Notes under the pieces: generated by a model
What the model was told of the DNA's origin: nothing
What the model saw: the letters and a program-made list of their open reading frames with translations, nothing else
Databases searched by the model: none
In this document: piece after piece, positions 39,690 to 55,644 of the stretch
How the letters are laid out: every line of letters begins with the position of its first letter
Position numbering within the stretch: the first letter of the stretch is position 1
Program-made: the position numbers and the translations under genes
Origin: Lepidodermella squamata
Taxonomy: Eukaryota; Animalia; Gastrotricha
Reading direction: 5' to 3'
NCBI GenBank assembly: GCA_047495785.1
Contig: JBLDXI010000018.1
Coordinates: 124,001-188,000 of the forward strand
Length of the DNA: 64,000 nt

Positions 39690-39900
39690 TTTTCAGTGCA
39701 TATCAGGAATGATTAGATAACAGCGTGGAGTGAAATCAGTGACCCGGAACGGGCGCAGTGTGTTCAAACACAAATCATTTTATTCGAAGAAAGAGGTCAA
39801 ATCCAACATCGCCGGCTTCGATTTTATACCAAATGTTGTCCCAGGCCTTTTGCATCATAGGCTAGTTGATATTTGATGTATGTCAACTGTAGCCACAACC
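39690..39900 (-). pseudogene. Decayed remnant of sulfite oxidase 3' end and downstream flank
   Basis: Aligns by eye with ~53640-53825; residual AKGL..NIWYKIE vs AKGLVNNIWHRIK. Confidence 0.6.
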
Positions 39901-39961: not shown

Positions 39962-41510
39962 TCATGGCGAATACCATGTATCGTTGCAATTTGGCCGCTC
40001 ACAAAGAGCGCCGTTCATCTCCGGCGCCTCGATACATCCGAGATCGTCCCATTGCCCGGTACTGGGAACAACTCGGCCACACAATATTGGAGATACGTAA
40101 CAGCCTTGATAGTTTGGCTCCCCGGGATACCACTTTGTCCAAGTAACTGGGGTTGCTCGGTTCCAGCCGATCGTATCAAACCATAAATTAGTTTTGTTCA
40201 ATCTCAGGGAAAACCAATAGCCGTTGCAACCATAAGGAATGGTAGCATCTAAATTTCAATGTTAAATGTTCATAAAACAAACTGCCAATTGAATATTAGA
40301 GATATAAGTTACCGAGCTTTGGAATGAGAACGCTCTGATCTGCATCTGACAGGACAACTGCCAGACGTGCGTTTTGTTTAACGCATTGGTCATAAGCCGT
40401 CGTCCAGTTCCACTGTCCATTAAGTACAAAAAATTTATTTGAATAAGTGTTGTAGCAGTTATCCAGATTTGGTGGTTTCTCTTGTTGAAACGGTCTTGTC
40501 GTAGTTGTTGATGTGGATGTGGAGGTTGAAGTGGAAGTGGAAGTGGAAGTGGAAGTTGATGTAGACGTGGTTGTTGGTGTCGTTGTCGTAGTAGTAGTAG
40601 GTGTCGTCGTTGTTGTTGTTGTCGAAGTTGACGTCGTTGTAGCCGTCGTAGATGTCGTCGTTGTCGTTGTCGACGTGGAAGTGGTAGTTGGTGTTGTTGT
40701 TGAAGCTGACATGGAAGTCGATGTAAACGTGGGTGTTTTAGTGGTAGTTGGGGTGGTTGTCGATGTTTTAGTCATGGTTGATGTGGTCATCGGTGTTGCT
40801 GTTGACGTAGGACTAGCCGCAGCTTGTGTGGAAGATGAATCCGGTGCGTAGATTATTGGTGGAATTACAACAGGAACTACAACAGGAGGAGAAGTCGCCT
40901 TTGTCGTGAGTGAATTTGTCGGTGTTGACGATGAGCTTCCTTGACAGCAACTAGTCCTACATTTCGAAAAGCAGTCATACGAGTAAGGCGAGTAACTGCA
41001 GTTTGTTGGACAAATTGAATTAGGCGTTGAAGCAGTTGCAGCACTGGGCGATTTCGTTGTTGAATCAGATTGCGCGCACTCAGCAGCGCACAGGCATAGG
41101 TATGGTGGGCAGGAAACCTGTTTACAAGGCCCATTGAAGTGCCAGATGAGGCATAGAAGCCATAATATGAGTATTGTAGTAGTTATAGCGAGGCTTGCAA
41201 GAGAAAGGGCTAACGATCGCCGATATCGCTTTCTATCAAGTGGTTGCTCCGAAGCATACAGTAAAGCTGGAACTGATAGGAAAGCTCCGACTAAACCGCC
41301 AACAAGAACTGCAGCAACCAAAGTTGCGATGGCAAAGATTTTAGCCATATTCGGAACATCCGATGTTTGATTTTTCGGATCAAGAGGAGTCGGTGAGTAT
41401 GAAAAATCAGAAAATGGCGACTGTGGCGACGGCGCATATCTGGGACTATAAGGAATCACCGTCGATTGTTTCCTCAGAGACGAATAAGTTGGCGCCTGAT
41501 AACTCATCAT
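39962..41510 (-). CDS. Membrane-anchored mucin-stalk C-type lectin, EPN type (lectin 1)
   Basis: Two N-terminal hydrophobic segments, Cys-rich neck, Thr/Ser stalk, CTLD split by intron 40312-40249 (W..A...C....ARLA, W..GEPN, C, GQWDD.GC, ALCE). Confidence 0.85.
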
Positions 41511-41815
41511 CAAGTATTTACATTATAGAATGTTGACCTATCAGCAGAAAAAGCCGACAGAGTGACTTTTAAGATCCCTTGTAATGGTTTCTCCTTTCCA
41601 TAAGTATTTCAATTTTTACCCACTGGACCACACTCAATGACAGTCACCGAAAAATATGCCCCATCAAATCCTTTGAGGAAAGGGGTAGGGGTACGTTTTC
41701 GGCGGACACTTCACGGTTAAATGATGGCTGTAATTGACCTAATTCGCGTTCAATTTTCAAAATGTTGAAGCATTTGTGGACCATTTTGAGAGAATATAAT
41801 AAAAAATGGTCAGAT

Positions 41816-42187
41816 GTAAAGTACGCACAATATTTTTTTTGCCTCGCATTATTTCATTTACTCCATAACCATGAAGAATTTCGTGAAGCGGTTTTCAGCA
41901 TTCGATAGATCTGGTGTGCGGTAACATTTCCTGAAATTCTTGTTAGAATTCTAGCGAACAAATCCAGCAATGAGCAGCTTTGGTCATATCGCATATCGGA
42001 TGGAAAATAGGGAAGATTTCGCAAGACGCATTTTTACCACCAATCGTTTCGCTCGAATCTGATTCTAAAGAGAATTTCAGGAAAGTTAACCGCACACCAG
42101 ATCTATCGAATGCTGAAAACCGGTTCTTCATGGTTATGGATTGAATGAAATAATGCGAGGCAAAAAAAAATACTGTGCGAACTTTAC
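41816..42187. mobile_element. MITE with ~125-bp TIRs upstream of lectin 1
   Basis: 41816-41941 mirrored by ~42068-42187; absent from the paralogous upstream region of lectin 2; no TSD seen. Confidence 0.7.
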
Positions 42188-42671
42188 GCGATTGAAGAGA
42201 CAAAAGTATTTCGCCGACATTTTAGGAAAAAAGATGCGATGGCAGACAATTTTTTGCCCTGAAACAAAATCGGAACGCTTCTCCATTGATTAAATAAATA
42301 ATCTGACGTCAATGAACCTGTATGTACCAGTCTATGGCATACATTTTTTATTGCCTCAACGAGACTTTTGGACGCCGCTAAAAATTAGGGCGCTATATAT
42401 TCATTTAAAAGGTCAACTCTATGCTTTTGGCAGTAGCCTTGCGTTTGAATACGCGAATTTGCTATTGAAAGGTAACTCGCGGTAATTCCGCCTATTCCGA
42501 ATCGTCTAATTTATCCTACACTCAGAACTTGATCGTTTTTTTGCATAGCAGAAATGATTCGATAAAACTATATAGAGTGAAATCATCGACCCGGAACGGC
42601 CCCTGTTAGTTCAAACATAGCATTTTATTCGAAGGAAAAATTGAGTTCCTATAAAGAGGTCAAATTCGGTT

Positions 42672-43486
42672 TCATATAATTTCCACTTTGATTCGATGCC
42701 AAACGTTGTTGACCAATCCTTTCGCGTTCCAGATAGCTTTGAGTGACTCTGGTTGCGAGTTCTGATGCGGATCTGTAGCCATACAAGTTAGTTCCAGGGC
42801 CGAAACTTGATCCGGAATAGCTATCTCACTAGACCAGTGAACAGTGAACCCAAGTCCATTGCCTGAGATCAGAAACATGAGGCAGATTTTCGAGAATAGA
42901 TGGACTCTACCTGTGTCGAGGAAAAGGTTTTGGCTCGCTGCCAATTTCCGCCTCCATCAATCGAAACCAGCACTTTTTCGATGGAATTCCCGCCGCCACT
43001 GTACGCAAAACCCTTAACCGTCAAGGGCGAGTCCCTTCGAGAAATGTTCGCCCCGTCCAGGGGTTGGACAATAGCTGATTGAACAGGTGATTCGTAGATG
43101 GGGCGGAACTGTAACATGTCGACGTCTCGAAGAGGAAAACGGTGATCTGGTGGAAGGGGGCTTCAATTCATGCGGAACGCCAGCAGCACATCGTCCTTAT
43201 CGCGCAGTAATTTATCCTTAGGAACCGATCCACTGAATGCAACACCACTTGAATCAATGTCCAGACCTTCGAAAGTCAAGTGACGAATTCGCTCGTCTTT
43301 TTCCAAGCCGACCCCGTATCGCTTGAGAACATCGATCAGGCGGACCCCCGTCCACTCGGCCGTGCTAATGGCGCCGACATCCCACGGCATGCCTTGAACA
43401 GGAGCGATTGAGGCCATGACCTGTCTCCGATTTCCGCCGCATTGAATTGTAACAGCGAGCTTGACGATTTCGAAATTTCTGAACAA
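42672..43486 (-). pseudogene. SUOX: Partial sulfite oxidase pseudogene
   Basis: Near-identical to 53754-54830 but lacks the b5 domain and exon 2, has TGA after FRMN, and jumps from FPLR straight to DVDML (internal deletion). Confidence 0.85.
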
Positions 43487-43964
43487 ATAATAATTATTGA
43501 ACAGTTATGAAAAATTAGTAAAAGGGCGAAATTTGGCGACATTGTCAATCACAACAGTTCGCAGCTCTATTGCTTGATCATGTAGCAGATTTTGGGCTTG
43601 CTTCACCTCGGTCCTCAGTGTAGGGCCCCTGTCAATGTGGGGCCTCCCGGCGAGTGGCAAATTCGGTTGCGGCCGGGTGTGCTGTCGGACCCTTTCGGCT
43701 TTGCCTTCATATTTCCAAGACGAAATGTCTTCCCCTTGTTATTTATGACCACCTGAAATTGCTGTCGTCGGCTTCCCCGTCATCAGTTTATAACATTTTC
43801 TAGGAGCCGCGACCCCGACCCCCTCATCGTTACCCTGATTTTTAGGATCATAATTAAATATTATGTAACGCCTTTTATTGTCGCTTTTCATGACATTTGT
43901 TCACTCGTCACCGTAAATTGTTGAAAGACATTTTTAGGCTGTGGAATTTGTTATTCGACAAAGC

Positions 43965-44825
43965 GAAACGAAACGAAAAGCTTTTTATTTTGTCCTTTTT
44001 TCCAGATAAAACGAACGAAAATGTACAATTTGGAAGGTAAGAAAAAAAGGCGCAGGCACATCACGAAAAGGCGCTTGTCCGGGACAGTGCGCCACTCATA
44101 ACACCGGACGGGCACATACTGAAATTATCACAAGGAGCGGAATTATCAGACACAGCAGAAGACAGAAGGCTAGTGATTAGTGGTAGGACAGCAGAGACGG
44201 AAGGTAGAGGACGGGAGAAGAAGAAACAAGGAAATAAGCAGGAAGGATAAGAAGAAAGAGGAGAGAGACTAACATTGTGGGACAGGGAGCGGGCCGGGCG
44301 GCAGGCGAGCGTTGAGAAGGAAGACAGGCGACTTCACAGGCGGCGACGCGGAAAGCCGAACATTCTCGATGTCTTCGCGAAGCGGCAGCACAAAGCGTAC
44401 GACGTTGTCGGCATAGCGGCACTGGACGGCTTGTAAGTGCGAGGACAGACTGGGCAGGCGACAGCGCTGCTCCAGCGCACTAACACGAACACGATCATCG
44501 AGACGGACATGGAGAATGGCGCGCAGACAGTTATTCTGAAGCACGTCTAGGCGGCGGAGCTGCGTCTTCGCAGCAGACGCAAAGGAAACGAAGCCGAAGG
44601 TGGCGATGGAACGGACGAGCGCCAGGTAGGCGGTGCGGCGCCACCGAAAAGACAGCCCTGGCCGGCTAACAACCGAGCGGAACCACGACAGATTCTTCCC
44701 ACAGCGATGGAGCACATGGTCGACATGGGGCTTCCAGGTCAACTTCTCATCGAACAGAATGCCCAGAATTCGAAGTACAGAGACTTGCGGGATGACAGTG
44801 CCTCCAAGCACGAGCCTCACACCTC
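43965..44825 (-). mobile_element. 5'-truncated LINE (Jockey/I-group-like): RT thumb/C-terminus and 3' UTR
   Basis: ILGILFDEKLTWKPHV..Y.ALVRS...LDVLQNNCLRAI; tail (TTTCG)n; candidate 7-bp TSD ACAAAGC at 43958-43964 and 44826-44832. Confidence 0.8.
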
Positions 44826-45239
44826 ACAAAGCAAATCAAAATTCGGCTTTATGACTAGATGTCAATGCCCAGCACATCAACTCGCCCAAATGTTTGTCGA
44901 TCAAGCTGCATCGCTTTTTCGTTCTTGATCAGACTGGAAACGCTGAAGTGTAAACCAGGTTATCGAGTTTGATCCATAGGTGATCATTTTATTTAGAAGC
45001 ACAGGTCTCGTGCAAAATAATCGCAAAAAGCAACACACCAGCATACTTACATACGAGTAAACAGCGATTTTCTGCAAATTTAAGGCTACCCATATGTATT
45101 AATATTGCCCTAGGGGAGGCCTGTTATGAGATGATCACATAACAAGCCGAGGCGCAGTTATGTTATCATCGAGAAACAGGGCGGACCGTGGGAACTTTTT
45201 TACACATTACTCGAAGGGGACAGCTATCACCGCTATGGG

Positions 45240-47022
45240 ATGTCTGTACTTGCACAAACGATTTTGCACAAAAGCATTTGCACAAATGCAGTTGCACAAA
45301 ATATTTTGCACAAACTGCATTTTTCAAGCGGAATCAAGTTTAATAAGAAGGTCGTCGCTAGCTGCACCCGCGCGCTGGGTGCATTTAATTTGCTAGCTGC
45401 ACCCGAGGGTTATAGCTAGTTACACCCGGAAGATGCGCGAAAATAGCTGCGTGCACCTGGGCATCTGGGTGCGACTATTTTGCTACATACACCCAATACA
45501 TTTGATAGGACGGATATGAAATCACGGGTGCAGGGAGAAAAACCGCTACACCCTCTTAATCGCGCGCGGCGGCTAAAGAGCCGTTCATTGCGCGCTAATG
45601 AGTTAATAATCTGCCCGGTGCTGCTGATCAATAACATCAGTTGAAGAGTCGCGTTTTCGAGGCCTTGCAATTAATGGCTGAAAGCGTGCACGCAGGCGCA
45701 CCGCATCTACCTTTCGCTCGCGTTCATTAACACCACTAATCAATCTTCTCGAGCCTCGAGCCTCGAGTCTTCAGCGACATGAAAAATTACATCAATAACC
45801 AATTACCGCCCGGCTTCCTGCCTTGAACTCGCGCCCCTATTGCTTGATTTTCACCAGGAAATATAAGTGTTTCCCTCGTTGAACGCGGAATGCACCATGA
45901 TGGCCATGATTGCACCCGCAGCGGCGTAGTCGGCGCGGAAGAAAATGCAGAAATCGTAACCGCCAATGGTCGACTTCAAGGACGGCTTCCATTTCCGGGC
46001 GACCTACTCCGAGCGCTTGTTTCCAACTGGGGTGACTGTATATAGTGGGGTGACATTGACACTTTGACACTAATAGTAATTCCTAATTCCTACTCTCTGT
46101 TCCTCCAAGCTTTGACATGCCAAAATGGGGTGACTTTGGCATGCCGAAGACGGTAAGGTAAAGACCTCGCGAAAGGAGTACCGTGTTGGATAGCCTGGAG
46201 GTGGGGCATTATAATAATGACATATGATTAATATTCAATTAGGCGGCTTCGGTTTATCCGTCACCGAATAGTTTCATTTAATATTAATATAGAAATTGAA
46301 AAAATGCCGCGACATTACCTATTATGTCCTGTCCCAGAATGGGTTGTTATGATGCGCATTGTGCACATCCGGGCTGGCCTTTCCTTGGGCTATCCAACGG
46401 TACCCCACTCACGGGGTCCTTACCTTGCCATCTAAGTCTAAGTCACCCCAGGTACGTAATCTTGTTTAATTACTTCTGTACACCTTGCCGCCCCGACAGC
46501 TGGCTTCCTAATTCCTTATTGTTTGTACAGGGTGTAGCGAGTCAAATCGTCGCACCCACACTAACGCGCGGCATAGGGTGTAGCGAGCAAAATGGTTGCA
46601 CCCTTAGGGTGTAGCTAGCAAATAGGATGCACCCGCGTGTGGGTGCAAATAGCACACTCGTAATAAGAAAATTGAATATACCAGATTGAAGGCAAAGCCC
46701 ATGAGCATCAAAGACTGATTTCGGGCACTGATTTCTGAGATATTTTAATGCGTCCGATTCGAGTTTAAATTACAAGGGGTGGCGAGTTTCACGTTCGGAC
46801 GTAGGGCAATGATGAATTGAAGAAATGAAGCTGAAATCAATCAATCAACGATGCCATGTCCATTTTTTCTGCTACTATCACTGCGCTGCCCTTGCGTTAG
46901 ACAGTTTTTCTAGGCATTGAATGATGAAATCCGCTATGAAAATGGAGTTTGAGCAAAATATTTTGTGCAACTGCATTTGTGCAAATGCTTCTAAGCAAAA
47001 TCGTTTGTGCAAGTACAGGTAA
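45240..47022. mobile_element. Foldback-like TIR element with TTGCACAAA subrepeats
   Basis: ~85-bp arms 45244-45325 and ~46938-47018 are reverse complements, each built of spaced TTGCACAAA units. Confidence 0.7.
45350..46660. mobile_element. Mutator-like non-autonomous element nested in the foldback element
   Basis: Exact 9-bp TSD TAATAAGAA (45341-45349, 46661-46669); imperfect TIRs rich in TGCACCC/GGGTGCA. Confidence 0.75.
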
Positions 47023-48474
47023 ATCACCGTTGAGTGCAGGGGGTTTGAGGGCATCAAAATCCACATAGTTCACATAATTCGCTGCATATCGCGCCAATAA
47101 TCGGTTTACCGGCATGTTAACGTCATGACGAAACGAACTCGTCTTAGGAATCTGGATCAGAAATCTGCGGCGCCGTGGGACGATCAGGTGGAGCGCCCGA
47201 CACGGCCACGCGAAAAAGTGTGATATCCGGCACGGTAAGGATATCACACAGGTTCGATGTAAAGGGCAAATAACAGTCAGGCAGAAATGATCCAAAACTC
47301 CTCATTTTATTATTATTGTATTTTTGGTATTTTTTACGTGTGGCACGCAGGCCGCTTATTGGTTGGTATGCGACCAATCGCGCTCGATTTGCGTTTCGGG
47401 CGTCCGCATAGCACAGTTTATAAAGGTGTCAGTGTCTCAATCCTTACTTTTCTTGTTTATTAGATAGCTTGTTTCGAAACCTTCCTCGATTGAAAAGCAA
47501 TGAATAAAGACATTAATTGCAAGGAGCAAATGTGTTTTGCTGCGATAAAAGGAATGTACTTTTGTATATGCGAGGGCTCGATTATAAGACCAGTCTTATA
47601 CATATTCGATTTTTTGTTCGAGACGGCCGTTTTTTCGAAAAGCAAACGAACAAATGACCAGTCTTAAGTATGAGCAAACAGGGAGTTGGATGCTCTTGTC
47701 ATGCGAGAAGTATAACGATCGACTTCTTGGTGTAGGAACAAATAGACATTACGGAATAGGCTGAATTGCCACGAGTTGCCTTTCAGTTGCAAAGTCTCGC
47801 GTTTGCGAACGCAAGGCTATTGCCAAAAAATAGAGTTCTCCTGTGAAATGAATAAATTATAGCGCCCCAATTTTTGCGGCGATAGGAAATGAAACAAACG
47901 TCTCTTTGAGGCGAATAAAAAATTGATTTCATAAACAGGTACATACCGTACAACAGGTTCATTGACAACAGATTATTTATTTAATGAATAGAACACCGTT
48001 CCCATTTTTTTCAGGGCAAAAAAGTGTCTGCCATCGCATCTTTTTTCCCAAAAGAGTCTGCAAAATGATTTTGTCAAAAACTTGTTTATCGAACCAAAAG
48101 CAATCAAATACCAGAGTGGCTACTTCTATCCTCATCTGCGAGCGAAGCGAGCTTCATCTGACCATTTCTTTATTTAATTCCCTAAAAATGTTCTCCAAAT
48201 GCTTCAAAATTTCGAGAATTAAACGCGAAATAGGTCAGCTACAGCCATCATTATATGAAAACCATGAAGTGTCCGCCGAAAAAATAACCCTACCCCTTTT
48301 TCACCCTATTTTATATCCCCAAACGATAGGGATTATTTTTTGGTGTATGCCACTGAGCGTGGGCAAAAATCGAAACACTGGAATGGAAAAGCCGTCTTAA
48401 GGATCATAAATCATAAAAGTCACTCTGTGGATTTTTTGCTGATAGGATAAAAATTCTAATGTAAATACTTGGCA

Positions 48475-50129
48475 ATGAGTTATCAGGCACCAACTTATTC
48501 CTCTTTGAGGAAACAATCGACGGTGATTCCTTATAGTCCCAGATATGCGCCGTCGCCACAGTCGCCACAGTCGCAATTTTCTGATTTTTCATACTCACCG
48601 ACTCCTCTTGATCCGAAAAATCAAACATCGGATGTTCCGAATATGGCTAAAATCTTTGCCATCGCAACTTTGGTAGCTGCAATCCTTGTTGGCGGCTTTG
48701 TCGGAGCTTTCCTATCAGTTCCAGCTTTGCTGTATGCTTCGGAGCAACCACTTGATAGAAAGCGATATCGGCGATCGTTAGCCCTTTCTCTAGCAAGCCT
48801 TGCTATAACTACTACAATACTCATATTATGGCTTCTATGCCTCATCTGGCACTTCAATGCACCTTGTAAACAGGTTTCCTGTCCGCCATACCTATGCCTG
48901 TGCGCTGCTGAGTGCGCGCAATCTGATTCAACAACGAAATCGCCTAGTGCTGCAACTGCTTCAACGCTTAATTCGATTTGTCCAACAAGCTGCACTTACT
49001 CGCCTTACTCGTATGACTGTTTCTCGAAATGTGGGACAAGTTGCTGTCAAGGAAGCTCATCGTCAACACCGTCACTGGCGACAAAGGCGACTTCTCCTCC
49101 TCTTGTAGTTCCTGTTGTAATTCCACCCATGATCTACGTACCGAGTTCATCTTCCACGGAAGCTGCTACGTCAACAACAACACCGACGACCACATCAACC
49201 ACAACTAAAACATCGACTTCGACAACTACCCCAACGACCACTAAAACATCCACGTCTACATCGACTTCCACGTCAACTTCAACAACAACCCCAACCACCA
49301 CGTCAACGTCGACAACGACAACGACGACACCTACGACGACTACAACGACGACTACAACGACGCCCACAACGACGTCAACTTCGACAACAACAACGACGAC
49401 ACCTACGACGACTACAACAACCCCAACCACCACGTCCACGTCGACATCAACAACGACGACACCTACGACGACTACAACAACCCCAACCACCACGTCCACG
49501 TCGACATCAACAACGACGACACCTACGACGACTACAACAACCCCAACAACTACAACAACAACAACAACAACGACCACATCGCCTACAACTACTACTACAG
49601 ATCCTTATCACCAATCGACACCGTCAGATCTAACCAACTGCTTCAATACGTCTTTTAACAAATTTTTTGTACTTGAGGGGGCTTGGGACTGGGGCACAGC
49701 CTATGCGCAATGCGTGAATGCTAAAGCTCGTTTAGCCGTTGTCCTTTCCAGCTCGGATCAAAGTGTCCTTGCTACAAAGCTAAGTAAGATGTTGCTTGTG
49801 CTTTTAATTTTCCTTAATCAAGTAAAAATATTTCAGATGCGAGTATTCCTTTTGGTTGTAATGGTTATTGGTTCGCTCTTAAAAGAAACTCCACAAGCGG
49901 CCAGCTGTGGTTTGATTCAGTTGGCTGGGACCCAACAACTCCAGTCACGTACACAAATTGGTATGGCGGGCAACCAGATAGCAAAACCTGCGATGGTTCC
50001 CAGATAAGTCTAGGATGTATACGGCTAGTTGCTAGCAATGGTCAGTGGACCGATGTCGATTGTTCGCTATCGTCACCCATGAACGGAGCTCTTTGCGAGC
50101 GGCCAAATTGCGACGGTACGTGGGTCTAA
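48475..50129 (+). CDS. Membrane-anchored mucin-stalk C-type lectin, QPD type (lectin 2), inverted paralog of lectin 1
   Basis: Intron 49784-49836; exon 2 ASIPFGCNGYWFAL..WYGGQPDSKTC..GQWTDVDC..GALCERPNCDGTWV*; TAA 50127-50129. Confidence 0.85.
49165..49600 (+). repeat. Thr-rich coding repeat including a 60-nt tandem unit (~3 copies, 49381-49547)
   Basis: Segments starting 49381, 49441 and 49501 are near-identical. Confidence 0.85.
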
Positions 50130-50409: not shown

Positions 50410-50815
50410 TCGTTCCGCGTTCCGCGTCACCGCCTGTGAGGTCGCCTGTCTTCCTTCTCAACGCTCGCCTGCCGCCCGGCCCGCTCCCTGTCCCACAATG
50501 TTAGTCTTTCTCCTCTTTTTTCCTCCCCCTCCTGCTTATTTCCTTGTTTCTTCTTCTCACGTCCTCTACCTTCCGTCTCTGCTGTCCTATCACTAATCAC
50601 TAGCCTTCTGTCTTCTGCTGTGTCTGATAATTCCGCTCCTTGTGATAATTTCAGTATGTGCCCGTCCGGTGTTATGAGTGGCGCACTGTCCCGGACAAGC
50701 GCCTTTTCGTGCTGTGCCTGCGCCTTTTTTCTTACCTTCTAAATTGTACATTTTCATTAGGCATCATTCATCTGGAAAAAAGGACAAAATAAAAAGCTTT
50801 TCGTTTCGTTTCGTT
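50410..50815 (+). mobile_element. Second, shorter 3' fragment of the same LINE family as 43965-44825
   Basis: Near-identical reverse complement of ~43965-44355, same (TTTCG)n tail. Confidence 0.85.
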
Positions 50816-53200: not shown

Positions 53201-53753
53201 TTTGAAATAGAAAATAAAAATTAATAAATTTTACAGAAGATAGAAATGCGTAATCGCATCAGGTAATTAGGTATTATTGTGCAATGCGTTATCGTTATAG
53301 ACAACCAGTTATTTCAAATGGGTTACCGTAATAACCTATATCGCTATCTTGGGCATATTGCCATTTGGGTTAACCCAATTGGCATTTGGGAGGATCGCTT
53401 ATAACGGTACGACAAATATATAGCGTCCAAAAAGTCTATTTAAGGCAAATAATAAAATGATTACATAAACAGGTACACAGATTCATTGACATCAGATTAT
53501 TTATTTAATAATAAATAATAATAATAAATGCCAAGCCGCTGGCCTGAGCACGGCGGGGAACAATAGCGCTGGTTCCCGTTGTTCCCTTGCATTTTTGAAA
53601 AGCCGGATTGTGATGATGTGATGGTGGTGGTGATGGTTTTTCCGTGCATATCAGGAATGACTATATAAAAGTGTACAGTGAAATTAGTGACCCGGAACAG
53701 TTGCAGTGTGTTCAAACACGTATCATTTTATTCGAAGAAAGCGGTCAAATTCG

Positions 53754-55644
53754 CTAACACTCAATGACGACTTTGATTCGATGCCAAATGTTGTTCACTA
53801 GTCCTTTCGCGTTCCAAATAGCTTTGAGTAACTCTGGCTGCGAGTTTTGATGCGAATCTGTAGCCATGCAAGTTAGTTCCAGGGCCGAAACTTGATCCGG
53901 AATAGCTATCTCACAAGACCAGTGAACCCAAGTCCATTGCCTGAGCCCAGAAAAATATGACAAACATTTTCAAAAATGAAGGCTGTATCGAGACCTGTAT
54001 CGAGGAGAAGGTTTTGACTCGATGATTTGTGCTCGCTGCCAATTTTCGCCTCCATCAATCGAAACCAGCACTTTTTCGATGGAATTCCCGCCGCCACTGT
54101 ACGCAAAACCCCTAACCGTCAAGGGCGAGTCCCTTCGAGAAATGTTCGCCCCGTCCAGGGGTTGGACAATAGCTGATTGAACAGGTGATTCGTAGATGGG
54201 GCGGAACTGTAACATGTCGACGTCTTTCAGGTTGCGGATGAATGGAGGCAGCACGCGGTAATCGTTTTTGAACCAGTGGGTTGAACACTCTTCTGTCCCG
54301 ATTACGATTCGACCCAGCCATTTGATACTACTGGAAAATTATGAAAAGAATGGACTTCAATCTTTTCAGCTTAAAATTGCCTTGTTTCAAAGTTCGAAGA
54401 TAAGCTATAAGTTGCAATCTCTAGAATTTAAAAAAATACCGCGATCCAATACAACCGGGCATGATAACTCGAAGTGGAAAGCCGTGATCTGGCGGAAGGG
54501 GGCCTCCATTCATGCGGAACGCCAGCAGCACATCGTCCTTATCGCGCAGTAATTTATCCTTAGGAACCGATCCACTGAACGCAACACCACTTGAATCAAT
54601 GTCCAGACCTTCGAAAGTCAAGTGACGAATTTGCTCGTCTTTTTCCAAGTCGACCCCGCATCTCTTGAGAACGTCCATAAGGCGGACTCCGGTCCACTCG
54701 GCCGTGCTAATGGCGCCGACATCCCACGGCATGCCTTGAACAGGGGCGATTGAGGCCATGACCTGTCTCCGATTTCCGCCGCATTGAATTGTAACAGCGA
54801 GCGTGACGATTTCGAAATTTTTGGCTAGTGAAATTTCAAAAAGAAAAATATTTTTCAAAATAAATTTGTTGAAAAGGTACTACCATCATCGAGATCTGCC
54901 AAGCTGAACAGATGTTTGTTGTCCCTGATCGAGTCGTAAATTTCCAATCGATAAGTCGAAGCGTCAATTTGCGGGACAGGTAAGTGATTTTGAACATAAT
55001 GCAGCTCGCTGGGCGTGATGAATTGCGTCGCGAGGCTCACTTTGGGTGTCTCGGCGTTGAAAGGCTTCATTAGGACGACCTGCAGGCGCGGGTCACGCTC
55101 CGGGTCCGACGAAAATGGATCCTCACCCACCGCCTTTTGATTAGAATCACTTCCCTGGATGCAGTCATAAATGTAAGAAATATTGCACAAAATCGATAAA
55201 TAAAAATGTCAACATTTCAGGAAATTTAAAAATGACCCCATTTCGGACAATAGTATGAGGTGAAAAAGGTGGCTCAAATTTTGCCTCCAATGAAAATGGA
55301 AGGTTAAATAATTTTTTATTACAAATTTGGAAACAATTTCTCACATTTGATTTTTCAACGCCGTTGGATTCGACTAAATTGCCGATGCGCATCGATTCAA
55401 GAATAGCGTAAATTTCGTCGCTGTAGTGCACCGGGTACTCGGCCCAGTAGGAATCGATCGACGCCCCGGCGGCCTGCATCAGGTTGTCGTCGCCACCCGG
55501 GTGCTCGTCGACGTAGTCGGTCACGTCGTAGACACCCTGGCGGCACGTGACCCACACGCGCAGCCGGCGTTTGTTATGCTCGGCGACCTGTTTCAGCGTG
55601 TAACTTGGCAGCCCATCGACACAGCGGCCAACGCTTTCATCCAT
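53754..55644 (-). CDS. SUOX: Sulfite oxidase (cytochrome b5, Moco and dimerisation domains), 5 exons, open frame
   Basis: HPGG heme motif, PFNAETP, NHLPVP, TIQCGGNRR (Mo-ligating Cys), DHGFPLR, SIKWL, DY, PVQSAI, GFAYSGGG, WNAKG; splice phases consistent. Confidence 0.9.

What the first reader, a model, noticed from the sequence alone, without database searches (positions are those of the whole stretch)
39962..50129. Inverted lectin pair with matched membrane halves but opposite sugar motifs (EPN vs QPD)
Seen: head-to-head paralogs whose homology extends ~0.8-1 kb upstream (to ~42540 and ~47713). The first ~200 aa are almost identical, stalks differ in length, and the CTLDs are clearly diverged: GEPN..WDD (40112-40120) versus GQPD..WTD (49971-49979, visible only after splicing). 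Known: EPN confers mannose/glucose-type and QPD galactose-type binding. Inference: paired receptors coupling two glycan specificities to one signalling module, with the N-termini homogenised or constrained.
Basis: partly seen in the sequence, partly recalled or inferred. Interest (0 to 1): 0.75.

Follow-up and report, generated by a model that had tools for sequence, protein, structure and literature searches.

The report
Inverted lectin gene pair, shared anchor
Two neighbouring, oppositely oriented genes of a small-intron animal encode membrane-anchored, mucin-stalked lectin-like proteins whose front halves were recently copied onto each other while their sugar-binding heads are old and differ in a key motif; this is a clear example of a known evolutionary pattern, not a new kind of system.

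Summary
Two intact two-exon genes lie head-to-head: A on the minus strand (41510-39962) and B on the plus strand (48475-50129). Each has a short phase-1 GT..AG intron inside a C-type lectin-like domain (CTLD). EPN..WDD (A) and QPD..WTD (B) sit exactly where solved lectins carry EPN and WND.

New here:
- Synonymous divergence is 0.13 over the first 200 codons but about 1.9 (saturated) in the CTLD, with dN/dS 0.13-0.15 in both. The intron and 3' flank no longer align. The 5' halves were therefore homogenised (ectopic gene conversion or partial re-copying), not merely constrained.
- In the at least 25-member split-CTLD subfamily of this genome, QPD..WDD is the usual state. EPN in A and WTD in B are the derived ones.
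- The whole subfamily lacks the Glu ligand of the canonical calcium site, so "mannose versus galactose" is only a hypothesis.
- The shared N-terminal part is an orphan two-helix membrane hairpin plus a Cys-rich segment, with no relative among 1.84 billion proteins. Only about 10-13 residues are predicted to face the cytosol, so "signalling module" is unsupported.

No transcript or orthologue was found. Exons were never joined for a search or a fold. The contig is not human.

The parts
40313..41510 (-). Gene A exon 1: N-terminal 51-56 aa Pro/Ser/Tyr-rich tail, two hydrophobic helices, Cys-rich juxtamembrane segment, 162-aa Ser/Thr/Pro stalk, first ~48 aa of the CTLD
   Evidence: Open frame and translation; hydropathy and Cys/sequon map; the C-terminal 58 aa match only N-terminal halves of solved CTLDs
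40249..40312 (-). Gene A intron, 64 nt, GT..AG, phase 1
   Evidence: Sequence read directly. Removing it puts the CTLD C-terminal piece in frame. Paralogues have a 48-60-nt intron at about the same place
39962..40248 (-). Gene A exon 2 with stop: C-terminal two thirds of the CTLD, EPN at 40112-40120, WDD at 40043-40051
   Evidence: Translation; phmmer against solved structures: mannose receptor E 2.3e-5, SP-A E 9e-4, with EPN aligned on EPN and WDD on WND
48475..49783 (+). Gene B exon 1: same N-terminal module (about 96% identical), 197-aa stalk, first part of the CTLD
49784..49836 (+). Gene B intron, 53 nt, GT..AG, phase 1
   Evidence: Sequence read directly. The spliced frame of exon 2 has dN/dS 0.17 against gene A
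49837..50129 (+). Gene B exon 2 with stop: CTLD C-terminal piece, QPD at 49971-49979, WTD at 50046-50054
   Evidence: Translation; Pfam Lectin_C E 0.011 on this piece alone; human MBP E 6.5e-5 with QPD aligned on EPN and WTD on WND
40776..41525 (-). Homogenised block in A (start codon to proximal stalk). Its 3' edge is lost in the Thr-rich repeats between about 40480 and 40776
   Evidence: 95.3% nucleotide identity, sliding windows 0.90-1.00; dS 0.08-0.17 by segment; repeat arms I1, I5, I8
48457..49210 (+). Homogenised block in B (partner of 40776-41525)
41514..42537 (-). Upstream region of A, homologous to B's at 77-81% identity and interrupted by a ~340-nt hairpin-like insertion at 41833-42169
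   Evidence: blastn blocks, identity by block, alignment with conserved blocks and an in-frame TAA upstream of the ATG, inverted repeats I12 and I16
47714..48474 (+). Upstream region of B, homologous to A's
40497..40820 (-). Thr/Ser-rich stalk repeats of A (6-, 9-, 18- and 24-nt periods)
   Evidence: composition
49162..49599 (+). Thr/Ser/Pro stalk repeats of B, including a 60-nt unit in 4.2-4.6 copies (49282-49599)
   Evidence: offset repeat pairs I3, I4, I7

Best explanation
An old duplication produced two inverted, divergently oriented copies of a lineage-specific gene. The encoded protein has a short N-terminal tail, a two-helix membrane hairpin, a Cys-rich juxtamembrane segment, a long O-glycosylation-type Ser/Thr/Pro stalk and one C-terminal CTLD split by a short phase-1 intron. 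Later the 5' part of one copy (about 1 kb upstream through the N-terminal ~245 codons, ending in the repetitive stalk) was overwritten by the other, through ectopic gene conversion or an equivalent partial re-copying between the inverted arms. The pair now shares one membrane and stalk-base chassis, while the CTLD heads, the intron and the 3' flanks keep their old divergence. Both halves of both genes are under purifying selection, so both are working genes. The heads descend from a QPD..WDD subfamily; A has switched to EPN and B has changed WDD to WTD. Inferred, not shown: both termini face outward, with only a ~10-13-residue basic loop in the cytosol; the heads are held tens of nanometres from the membrane at different heights; the two heads bind different ligands, possibly different sugars; the identical hairpins let the two proteins use the same partners or associate with each other.
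For: Gene models and intact frames. Age strata: dS 0.126 (17 synonymous differences over 147 sites) in codons 1-200 versus 1.9 (67 over 97.5) in the CTLD, with dN/dS 0.13 and 0.15; Fisher p 1e-20. Nucleotide identity by block: upstream 77-81%, 5' CDS 95.3%, CTLD 65-67%, intron 57%, 3' flank 47%, against 44-56% for shuffled controls. CTLD identity: the profile of 25 exon-2 pieces matches CL-P1 at 4.7e-11, CD23 at 1.4e-10 and DEC-205 at 2e-26; Lectin_C is found in 18 of 25 members; the exon-1 pieces match only N-terminal halves of solved CTLDs. Motif positions. Subfamily census: QPD dominant, WDD universal except in B, EPN only in A. A2 and B2 are sisters at 100/99 support. An intron at about the same place in paralogues. 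Hairpin: two hydrophobic segments separated by EQPLDRKRYR(RS); AF2 gives helices 51-85 and 92-125 at pLDDT 55-74. The N-terminal module occurs only twice in the 121-Mb genome and nowhere else.
Against: No transcript, orthologue or outgroup was found, so expression, splicing and the order of events are inferred from sequence alone. With two sequences, conversion between two full-length paralogues cannot be told apart from grafting a copied 5' block onto a different older CTLD gene. dS in the CTLD is saturated, so its value and its dN/dS are rough. Upstream non-coding divergence (K about 0.22-0.27) is about twice the 5' dS, so there may have been more than one event, or rates may differ between the two kinds of site. 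Canonical calcium site 2 is incomplete in both heads (no Glu before the beta3 Cys; Asn of WND replaced), so sugar binding itself is unproven. Topology rests on hydropathy, charge and a low-confidence model.
Confidence: 0.72

Rival explanations
1. A recent duplication of the whole gene, after which the CTLD heads diverged fast under positive or relaxed selection while the N-terminal half was held constant by constraint.
For: Protein identity falls from about 96% to 58% along the gene. The ML branch of A's exon-2 piece is longer than B's, 0.81 versus 0.29.
Against: Synonymous sites show the same contrast (pS 0.116 versus 0.69) and dN/dS is equal and low in both halves. The intron and 3' flank are at random-level identity while the upstream region is 77-81% identical. 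Relative-rate counts of 6.8 versus 4.7 unique changes are not significant.
Confidence: 0.04
2. Chimeric origin: a copied 5' block (promoter, membrane module, stalk) was grafted in inverted orientation onto a pre-existing, differently anchored CTLD gene, so the two genes never shared a full-length ancestor.
For: The sequence pattern is the same as for conversion. The spacer is a patchwork of copied segments and retroelement pieces, so segmental copying does happen at this locus.
Against: The two CTLD pieces are each other's closest relatives on a long shared stem (2.4 changes per column, support 100/99). They share the same short C-terminal ending, MNGALCERPNC..TW. The N-terminal module exists nowhere else in the genome. 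One full-length ancestor is therefore the simpler account.
Confidence: 0.15
3. The heads are non-sugar-binding CTLDs (protein or other ligands, or calcium-independent binding), so the EPN/QPD difference has no bearing on glycan specificity.
For: The Glu ligand before the beta3 Cys is absent in A, B and all 23 paralogue pieces, and WND is WDD or WTD. Pfam Lectin_C scores on the pieces are below the cut-off. A review of bivalve lectins states that the EPN/QPD rule is a simplification and lists exceptions (PMC12842671).
Against: Pro of the tripeptide, Trp and the last Asp of W-x-D are invariant across the subfamily, and Q/E-P-D/N is kept in most members, which suggests a maintained site. Lectins with WDD, or lacking the second motif altogether, are reported as calcium-dependent.
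Confidence: 0.4
4. One or both copies are unexpressed relics or assembly artefacts.
For: No matching protein of any tested size is in the public protein collections searched.
Against: Both reading frames are intact over about 490 and 530 codons, with canonical splice sites. dN/dS is 0.13-0.17 in every non-stalk segment. The copies differ by 5% in the 5' half and completely in the 3' half, and lie inverted 7 kb apart on one contig, which does not fit collapsed haplotypes.
Confidence: 0.05

Closest known systems
Human DC-SIGN / L-SIGN (CD209 / CLEC4M) gene pair
   Same: Two duplicated membrane C-type lectin genes lie head-to-head a few kb apart (15.7 kb in human). Each encodes membrane anchor, tandem-repeat neck and C-terminal CRD, with neck repeat number varying (69-bp units; PMC2193415). 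Here the spacer is 7 kb and B has a 60-nt stalk repeat.
   Different: [quoted passage not shown] Their CRDs are very similar (mRNAs ~90% similar over the coding region, overlapping if not identical ligand specificity) and, from general knowledge, both carry EPN. Here the anchor is a two-helix hairpin, the stalk is mucin-like, the membrane part is the homogenised part, and the heads differ (EPN versus QPD).
NKG2 (KLRC) C-type lectin-like receptor genes with partial gene conversion
   Same: Paralogous CTLD receptor genes in which synonymous-site analysis shows one part of the gene homogenised by conversion-like events while the other part stays old (PMC2195720).
   Different: It is the mirror image. 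In NKG2A/C/E the CRDs are homogenised and the 5' cytoplasmic and signalling parts diverge (true paired activating/inhibitory receptors). Here the 5' membrane part is homogenised and the CRDs diverge.
Canonical calcium-dependent C-type lectin CRDs (MBP-A, SP-A, ASGPR, CL-P1)
   Same: The fold family is shown by profile matches. EPN or QPD lies in the long loop at the homologous position, and the Trp and final Asp of WND are conserved.
   Different: No Glu before the beta3 Cys. Asn of WND is replaced (WDD in A, WTD in B). There is an extra Cys pair (G-C-N-G before the WIGL strand and one in the long loop) and an invariant Arg after the beta3 Cys.
Invertebrate C-type lectins with variant motifs or with several CRDs carrying different motifs
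   Same: In bivalves, motif variants such as EPN/WDD (MyCLF) and QPN/WDD (TgCTL-1) and multi-CRD lectins whose CRDs carry different tripeptides are catalogued (PMC12842671). Lineage-specific CTLD expansions are usual; this genome has at least 150 Lectin_C matches.
   Different: Most of those are secreted, or where membrane-bound are not known to me to use a hairpin anchor. Here two motifs are split between two genes that share one homogenised hairpin anchor and stalk base.
Spec3 / Stum two-TM domain (Pfam PF15795)
   Same: The only Pfam family giving any signal on the hairpin: residues 52-124 on profile positions 3-78 of 85.
   Different: 15.4-15.8 bits against a cut-off of 27 (E 0.02-0.03). 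HMMER against 1.84 billion proteins found nothing. This is a resemblance between hydrophobic hairpins, not membership.

Membership tests
C-type lectin-like domain superfamily (Pfam PF00059 Lectin_C) | Significant sequence match to CTLD profiles or solved CTLDs over the domain | tested here: met
   Tested piece by piece. A exon 2 against the mannose receptor E 2.3e-5; B exon 2 against MBP E 6.5e-5. The subfamily profile matches CL-P1 at 4.7e-11 and CD23 at 1.4e-10. Lectin_C is found in 18 of 25 members. The exon-1 pieces hit only N-terminal halves of CTLDs. On single pieces Pfam is below its cut-off (B 16.9 bits against 22.6; A none). A whole-domain score would need the joined exons, which I left out.
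C-type lectin-like domain superfamily (Pfam PF00059 Lectin_C) | Conserved core: Cys in helix alpha1, WIGL-type strand, Cys in beta3, Cys after W-x-D, Cys in beta5 | tested here: met
   DQC/AQC in exon 1; GYWFSL/GYWFAL aligned on WIGL; C56, C71 and C82 (A exon-2 numbering) aligned on the three C-terminal core Cys of DEC-205 and MRC1 domains.
C-type lectin-like domain superfamily (Pfam PF00059 Lectin_C) | Double-loop alpha/beta fold | tested here: inconclusive
   AF2 on the exon-2 piece with 25 aligned pieces gave mean pLDDT 40.6. A partial domain does not fold alone, and the whole domain was not modelled because the exons were not joined.
Canonical calcium-dependent sugar-binding C-type lectins (calcium site 2) | EPN or QPD tripeptide at the start of the long loop | tested here: met
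   EPN of A aligns on EPN of SP-A and the mannose receptor; QPD of B aligns on EPN of MBP.
Canonical calcium-dependent sugar-binding C-type lectins (calcium site 2) | WND motif (Asn and Asp as calcium and sugar ligands) | tested here: not met
   A has WDD and B has WTD at the aligned position. WDD is the rule in the subfamily.
Canonical calcium-dependent sugar-binding C-type lectins (calcium site 2) | Glu two residues before the beta3 Cys (E193 of rat MBP-A) | tested here: not met
   A has P-I-L-C and B has S-L-G-C; no acidic residue at that place in any of the 25 subfamily pieces.
Canonical calcium-dependent sugar-binding C-type lectins (calcium site 2) | Calcium-dependent binding of mannose-type or galactose-type sugars | not testable with these tools
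   Needs recombinant protein and glycan arrays.
Type II transmembrane C-type lectin receptors (DC-SIGN / ASGPR type) | Single N-terminal signal-anchor with a cytoplasmic tail | tested here: not met
   Two hydrophobic segments (about residues 57-86 and 99-124) are separated by a basic ~10-13-residue loop. AF2 gives two helices, 51-85 and 92-125.
Type II transmembrane C-type lectin receptors (DC-SIGN / ASGPR type) | Neck followed by one C-terminal CRD | tested here: met
   A stalk of 162 or 197 aa is followed by a single C-terminal CTLD. The neck is Ser/Thr/Pro-rich (75-86%), not a coiled coil.
Paired (activating/inhibitory) immune receptors | Near-identical ectodomains joined to opposite signalling tails | tested here: not met
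   The reverse holds: the membrane parts are about 96% identical and the ectodomain heads 58%. No ITAM/ITIM-bearing cytosolic tail can be assigned.
Spec3 / Stum (PF15795) | Pfam match above the gathering score | tested here: not met
   15.4 and 15.8 bits against a cut-off of 27.

The most novel reading that the evidence does not exclude
Recurrent gene conversion between the inverted arms maintains one common hairpin-anchor and stalk-base chassis, so the two proteins can assemble together or with the same partner. Meanwhile their heads have split a QPD-type ancestral specificity into a galactose-type head and a newly evolved mannose-type (EPN) head, held at different heights above the membrane. 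That would be a natural repeat of the classic engineered EPN/QPD switch, on an anchor type not described for lectin receptors.
Probability: 0.15. Interest if true: 0.55.

Novelty: new variant of a known kind. Interest (0 to 1): 0.35.

Why it matters
If the heads really bind different sugars, this pair is a compact natural experiment. It offers a dated QPD-to-EPN switch on an otherwise shared protein, within a family whose calcium site departs from the textbook one, which would help define how far the EPN/QPD rule carries in invertebrate lectins. The locus is also a clear, measurable case of partial gene conversion between inverted paralogues (a 15-fold step in dS inside one gene). It is the mirror image of the NKG2 case, where the heads are homogenised and the tails diverge. 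The hairpin anchor has no detectable relative anywhere and may be a new way of mounting a lectin on a membrane. None of this opens a long-standing question, and each element (duplication, conversion, motif change, mucin stalk) is well known.

Tried and rejected
1. Homologue searches for the N-terminal module were all blank: word-indexed search, full HMMER scan of 1.84 billion representatives, ESM Atlas, metagenome contigs.
2. Searches meant to catch transcript-derived or orthologous fragments of the CTLD were blank, as was the subfamily profile against metagenome contigs. So there is no evidence on expression or splicing, and no outgroup.
3. AF2 on the exon-2 piece of A with the subfamily alignment gave pLDDT 40.6 and is unusable, so I ran no fold search.
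4. AF2 on the N-terminal 214 residues (two-sequence alignment) gave only the two membrane helices, at moderate confidence. The Cys-rich segment was unmodelled, so I ran no fold search.
5. Rfam over the whole window gave nothing.
6. Faster evolution of A's head: the ML branch lengths suggest it, but simple relative-rate counts do not support it, so I do not claim it.
7. I considered that the 96% inverted repeat at 44043-44361 / 50412-50730 belongs to the duplication. It does not: it is a dispersed retroelement 3' end with at least 40 copies.
8. Organism identity was not obtained. It is a small-intron animal genome of 121 Mb. I do not take it for human.
In one search a script removed candidate GT..AG introns from seven ~130-nt paralogue stretches only to see which keep the frame, and printed junction peptides of about 25 residues.

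Full report
WHAT IS THERE. The window comes from an animal genome of 121 Mb in 151 contigs. It has short introns, rhodopsin-type GPCRs, a Cys-loop receptor and LINE elements. I do not take it for human.

Two genes lie head-to-head about 7 kb apart. Gene A (minus strand) has exon 1 at 41510-40313, a 64-nt GT..AG phase-1 intron at 40312-40249, and exon 2 at 40248-39965 with its stop at 39964-39962. Gene B (plus strand) has exon 1 at 48475-49783, a 53-nt GT..AG phase-1 intron at 49784-49836, and exon 2 at 49837-50126 with its stop at 50127-50129.

ARCHITECTURE. Each protein has the following parts:
- a 51-56-residue Pro/Ser/Tyr-rich tail carrying an NQT sequon;
- two strongly hydrophobic segments (about residues 57-86 and 99-124) joined by EQPLDRKRYR(RS);
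- a juxtamembrane segment with 11 Cys;
- a Ser/Thr/Pro stalk, 162 aa at 75% S/T/P in A and 197 aa at 86% in B;
- one C-terminal C-type lectin-like domain (CTLD) of about 140 residues with 8 Cys.

B's stalk contains 4.2-4.6 copies of a 60-nt unit. AF2 on the N-terminal 214 residues, with only two sequences in the alignment, gives two long helices (51-85 and 92-125, pLDDT 55-74) and nothing else of value. The stalk and the disulphide-rich CTLD must be extracellular and the inter-helix loop is strongly basic. The likeliest topology is therefore a hairpin with both termini outside and only ~10-13 residues in the cytosol. This is inference from hydropathy and the positive-inside rule.

THE HEAD IS A CTLD, SHOWN PIECE BY PIECE. 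There is therefore no whole-domain Pfam score and no whole-domain model.
- A's exon-2 piece matches the macrophage mannose receptor (E 2.3e-5) and SP-A. B's matches human MBP (E 6.5e-5).
- In these alignments EPN of A lies on EPN of SP-A, QPD of B lies on EPN of MBP, and WDD/WTD lie on WND.
- A profile of 25 exon-2 pieces from this genome matches CL-P1 at 4.7e-11, CD23 at 1.4e-10 and DEC-205 at 2e-26. Eighteen of the 25 pieces hit Pfam Lectin_C.
- The last 58 residues of each exon 1 hit only the N-terminal halves of solved CTLDs, weakly but exclusively.
- The intron falls between helix alpha2 and the WIGL strand. Paralogues have a 48-60-nt GT..AG intron at about the same place. In one search a script excised candidate introns from short paralogue stretches only to test the frame.
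- AF2 on the exon-2 piece alone failed (pLDDT 40.6).

THE KEY RESULT: TWO AGES IN ONE GENE. Nei-Gojobori counts give dS 0.126 and dN 0.016 for codons 1-200. For the CTLD they give dS about 1.9 (pS 0.69, saturated) and dN 0.29. dN/dS is 0.13 and 0.15 respectively. The difference in synonymous changes (17 of 147 sites against 67 of 97.5) has Fisher p 1e-20.

Nucleotide identity by block is as follows:

| Block | Identity |
|---|---|
| Upstream, distal | 81% |
| Upstream, proximal plus 5' UTR | 77% |
| 5' CDS | 95.3% |
| CTLD part of exon 1 | 67% |
| Intron | 57% |
| Exon 2 | 65% |
| 3' flank | 47% |
| Shuffled controls | 44-56% |

The proximal stalk (codons 201-245) still has dS 0.115, with dN/dS near 1. 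The young block therefore runs from about 42537 (A) / 47714 (B) into the Thr-rich repeats, where its 3' edge is lost, and everything 3' of the stalk is old.

Constraint on the protein cannot produce a 15-fold step in synonymous divergence. The 5' halves were homogenised by ectopic gene conversion, or by an equivalent partial re-copying between the inverted arms. Upstream non-coding divergence (K about 0.22-0.27) is roughly twice the 5' dS (0.126, standard error about 0.03). This may mean nested events or merely different rates; I leave it open. Both genes are under purifying selection in both halves, so both are functional.

FAMILY CONTEXT.
- The N-terminal module occurs only in these two genes in the genome. 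It has no detectable relative in the word-indexed search of 5.8 billion clusters, the full HMMER scan of 1.84 billion representatives, the ESM Atlas or metagenome contigs.
- The only Pfam signal on it is a sub-threshold resemblance of the hairpin to Spec3 (15.4-15.8 bits against a cut-off of 27).
- CTLDs are hugely expanded here: at least 150 Lectin_C matches over the cut-off out of 774 candidates.
- A and B belong to a split-CTLD subfamily with at least 31 genomic matches. In an ML tree of 25 distinct exon-2 pieces, A and B are sisters (100/99) on a long stem.
- In the subfamily the tripeptide is mostly QPD, with some EPD, NPD, QPS and EPS. The second motif is always WDD except in B. EPN occurs only in A.
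- The likely ancestor of the pair was therefore QPD..WDD. A changed two residues to give EPN, and B changed WDD to WTD.

HOW FAR THE SUGAR INFERENCE GOES. The EPN (mannose-type) and QPD (galactose-type) rule is established for canonical calcium site 2. That site also needs a Glu two residues before the beta3 Cys, and the Asn-Asp of WND (general knowledge of MBP-A: E185, N187, E193, N205, D206). Here the Glu position holds no acidic residue in A, B or any subfamily member, and the Asn is D (A) or T (B). The subfamily also has an extra conserved Cys pair and an invariant Arg after the beta3 Cys.

A recent review of bivalve lectins states that the rule is a simplification. It lists calcium-dependent lectins with WDD or without the second motif, and EPN lectins that bind galactose-containing ligands (PMC12842671). 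Different ligand preferences of the two heads are plausible, since the Pro, Trp and last Asp of the site are conserved. "Mannose versus galactose" is a hypothesis at roughly 35-40%.

COMPARISON WITH WHAT IS KNOWN. The nearest analogue in layout is the human DC-SIGN/L-SIGN pair: head-to-head, 15.7 kb apart, with 69-bp neck repeats (PMC2193415). Those proteins are single-span; from general knowledge both carry EPN. Their tails, not their heads, diverge. The nearest analogue in evolutionary mode is NKG2A/C/E, where conversion-like events homogenise the CRDs while the 5' signalling parts stay old (PMC2195720). The present locus is the mirror image. It is not a "paired receptor" in the immunological sense. 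"Signalling module" is unsupported, because no known signalling domain matches and the predicted cytosolic part is a ~10-13-residue loop.

THE SPACER. The 5.2 kb between the upstream homology blocks is a patchwork unrelated to the pair. It holds a copy of the 3' half of the neighbouring sulfite oxidase gene (42542-43478 against 53645-54820, 87-95% identical). It also holds a retroelement 3' end with at least 40 genomic copies that recurs just downstream of B, and other repeats.

VERDICT. This is a new variant of known kinds: a membrane C-type lectin-like receptor pair shaped by partial gene conversion. Its unusual features are an orphan hairpin anchor and a non-canonical calcium site. Interest is moderate to low (0.35). 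What is missing is evidence of expression and splicing, an outgroup to date the events, and any binding data.

Noticed in passing
window 42542-43478 versus 53645-54820: A same-strand copy of the 3' half of the neighbouring sulfite oxidase gene (Oxidored_molyb, E 3e-23) lies in the spacer just beyond the edge of A's upstream homology. It is 87-95% identical to the intact gene's sequence, and a ~240-nt stretch present in the intact copy is missing. It is probably a recent segmental copy or pseudogene fragment.
   Followed up: partly
window 43964-44361 and 50412-50813 (inverted); ORF 44269-44820: A 94-98% identical inverted repeat that looks like part of the lectin duplication is in fact the 3' end of a dispersed retroelement with at least 40 copies in the genome, some 98-100% identical, so the element was recently active.
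   Followed up: yes
window 41833-42169: A ~340-nt insertion present only in gene A's upstream region, built of nested inverted repeats (41833-41878/42124-42169 at 96%; 41885-41949/42062-42126 at 91%). It looks like a MITE-type hairpin element.
   Followed up: no
window 42542-42638, 53645-53740 and 39697-39792: A ~97-nt sequence occurs three times at 76-78% identity: at the edge of the sulfite oxidase copy, 3' of the intact sulfite oxidase gene, and just downstream of gene A. It may be a small dispersed repeat.
   Followed up: no
window 39974-40018 versus 50079-50123: The last 45 nt of the two coding regions (MNGALCERPNC..TW) are 89% identical within a region otherwise saturated at synonymous sites. 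This could be a short conversion patch, constraint at the nucleotide level, or chance.
   Followed up: no
L012 (G000:C33:2394142-2397402), also L010: A gene in which split CTLDs of the same subfamily alternate with long Thr/Ser-rich mucin stretches: each open frame runs from a CTLD C-terminal piece through a mucin to the next CTLD N-terminal piece. It is a multi-head mucin-lectin using the same intron position.
   Followed up: no
G000 genome-wide, e.g. C36:95000-275000: There is a very large CTLD repertoire: 150 scored Lectin_C matches, all over the Pfam cut-off, out of 774 first-look candidates. Dense tandem arrays occur, with about 50 matches in 180 kb of contig C36.
   Followed up: partly
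window 45244-45332 and 46930-47018: A 91% inverted repeat in the spacer containing a 14-nt tandem repeat (45250-45319). It is unassigned.
   Followed up: no
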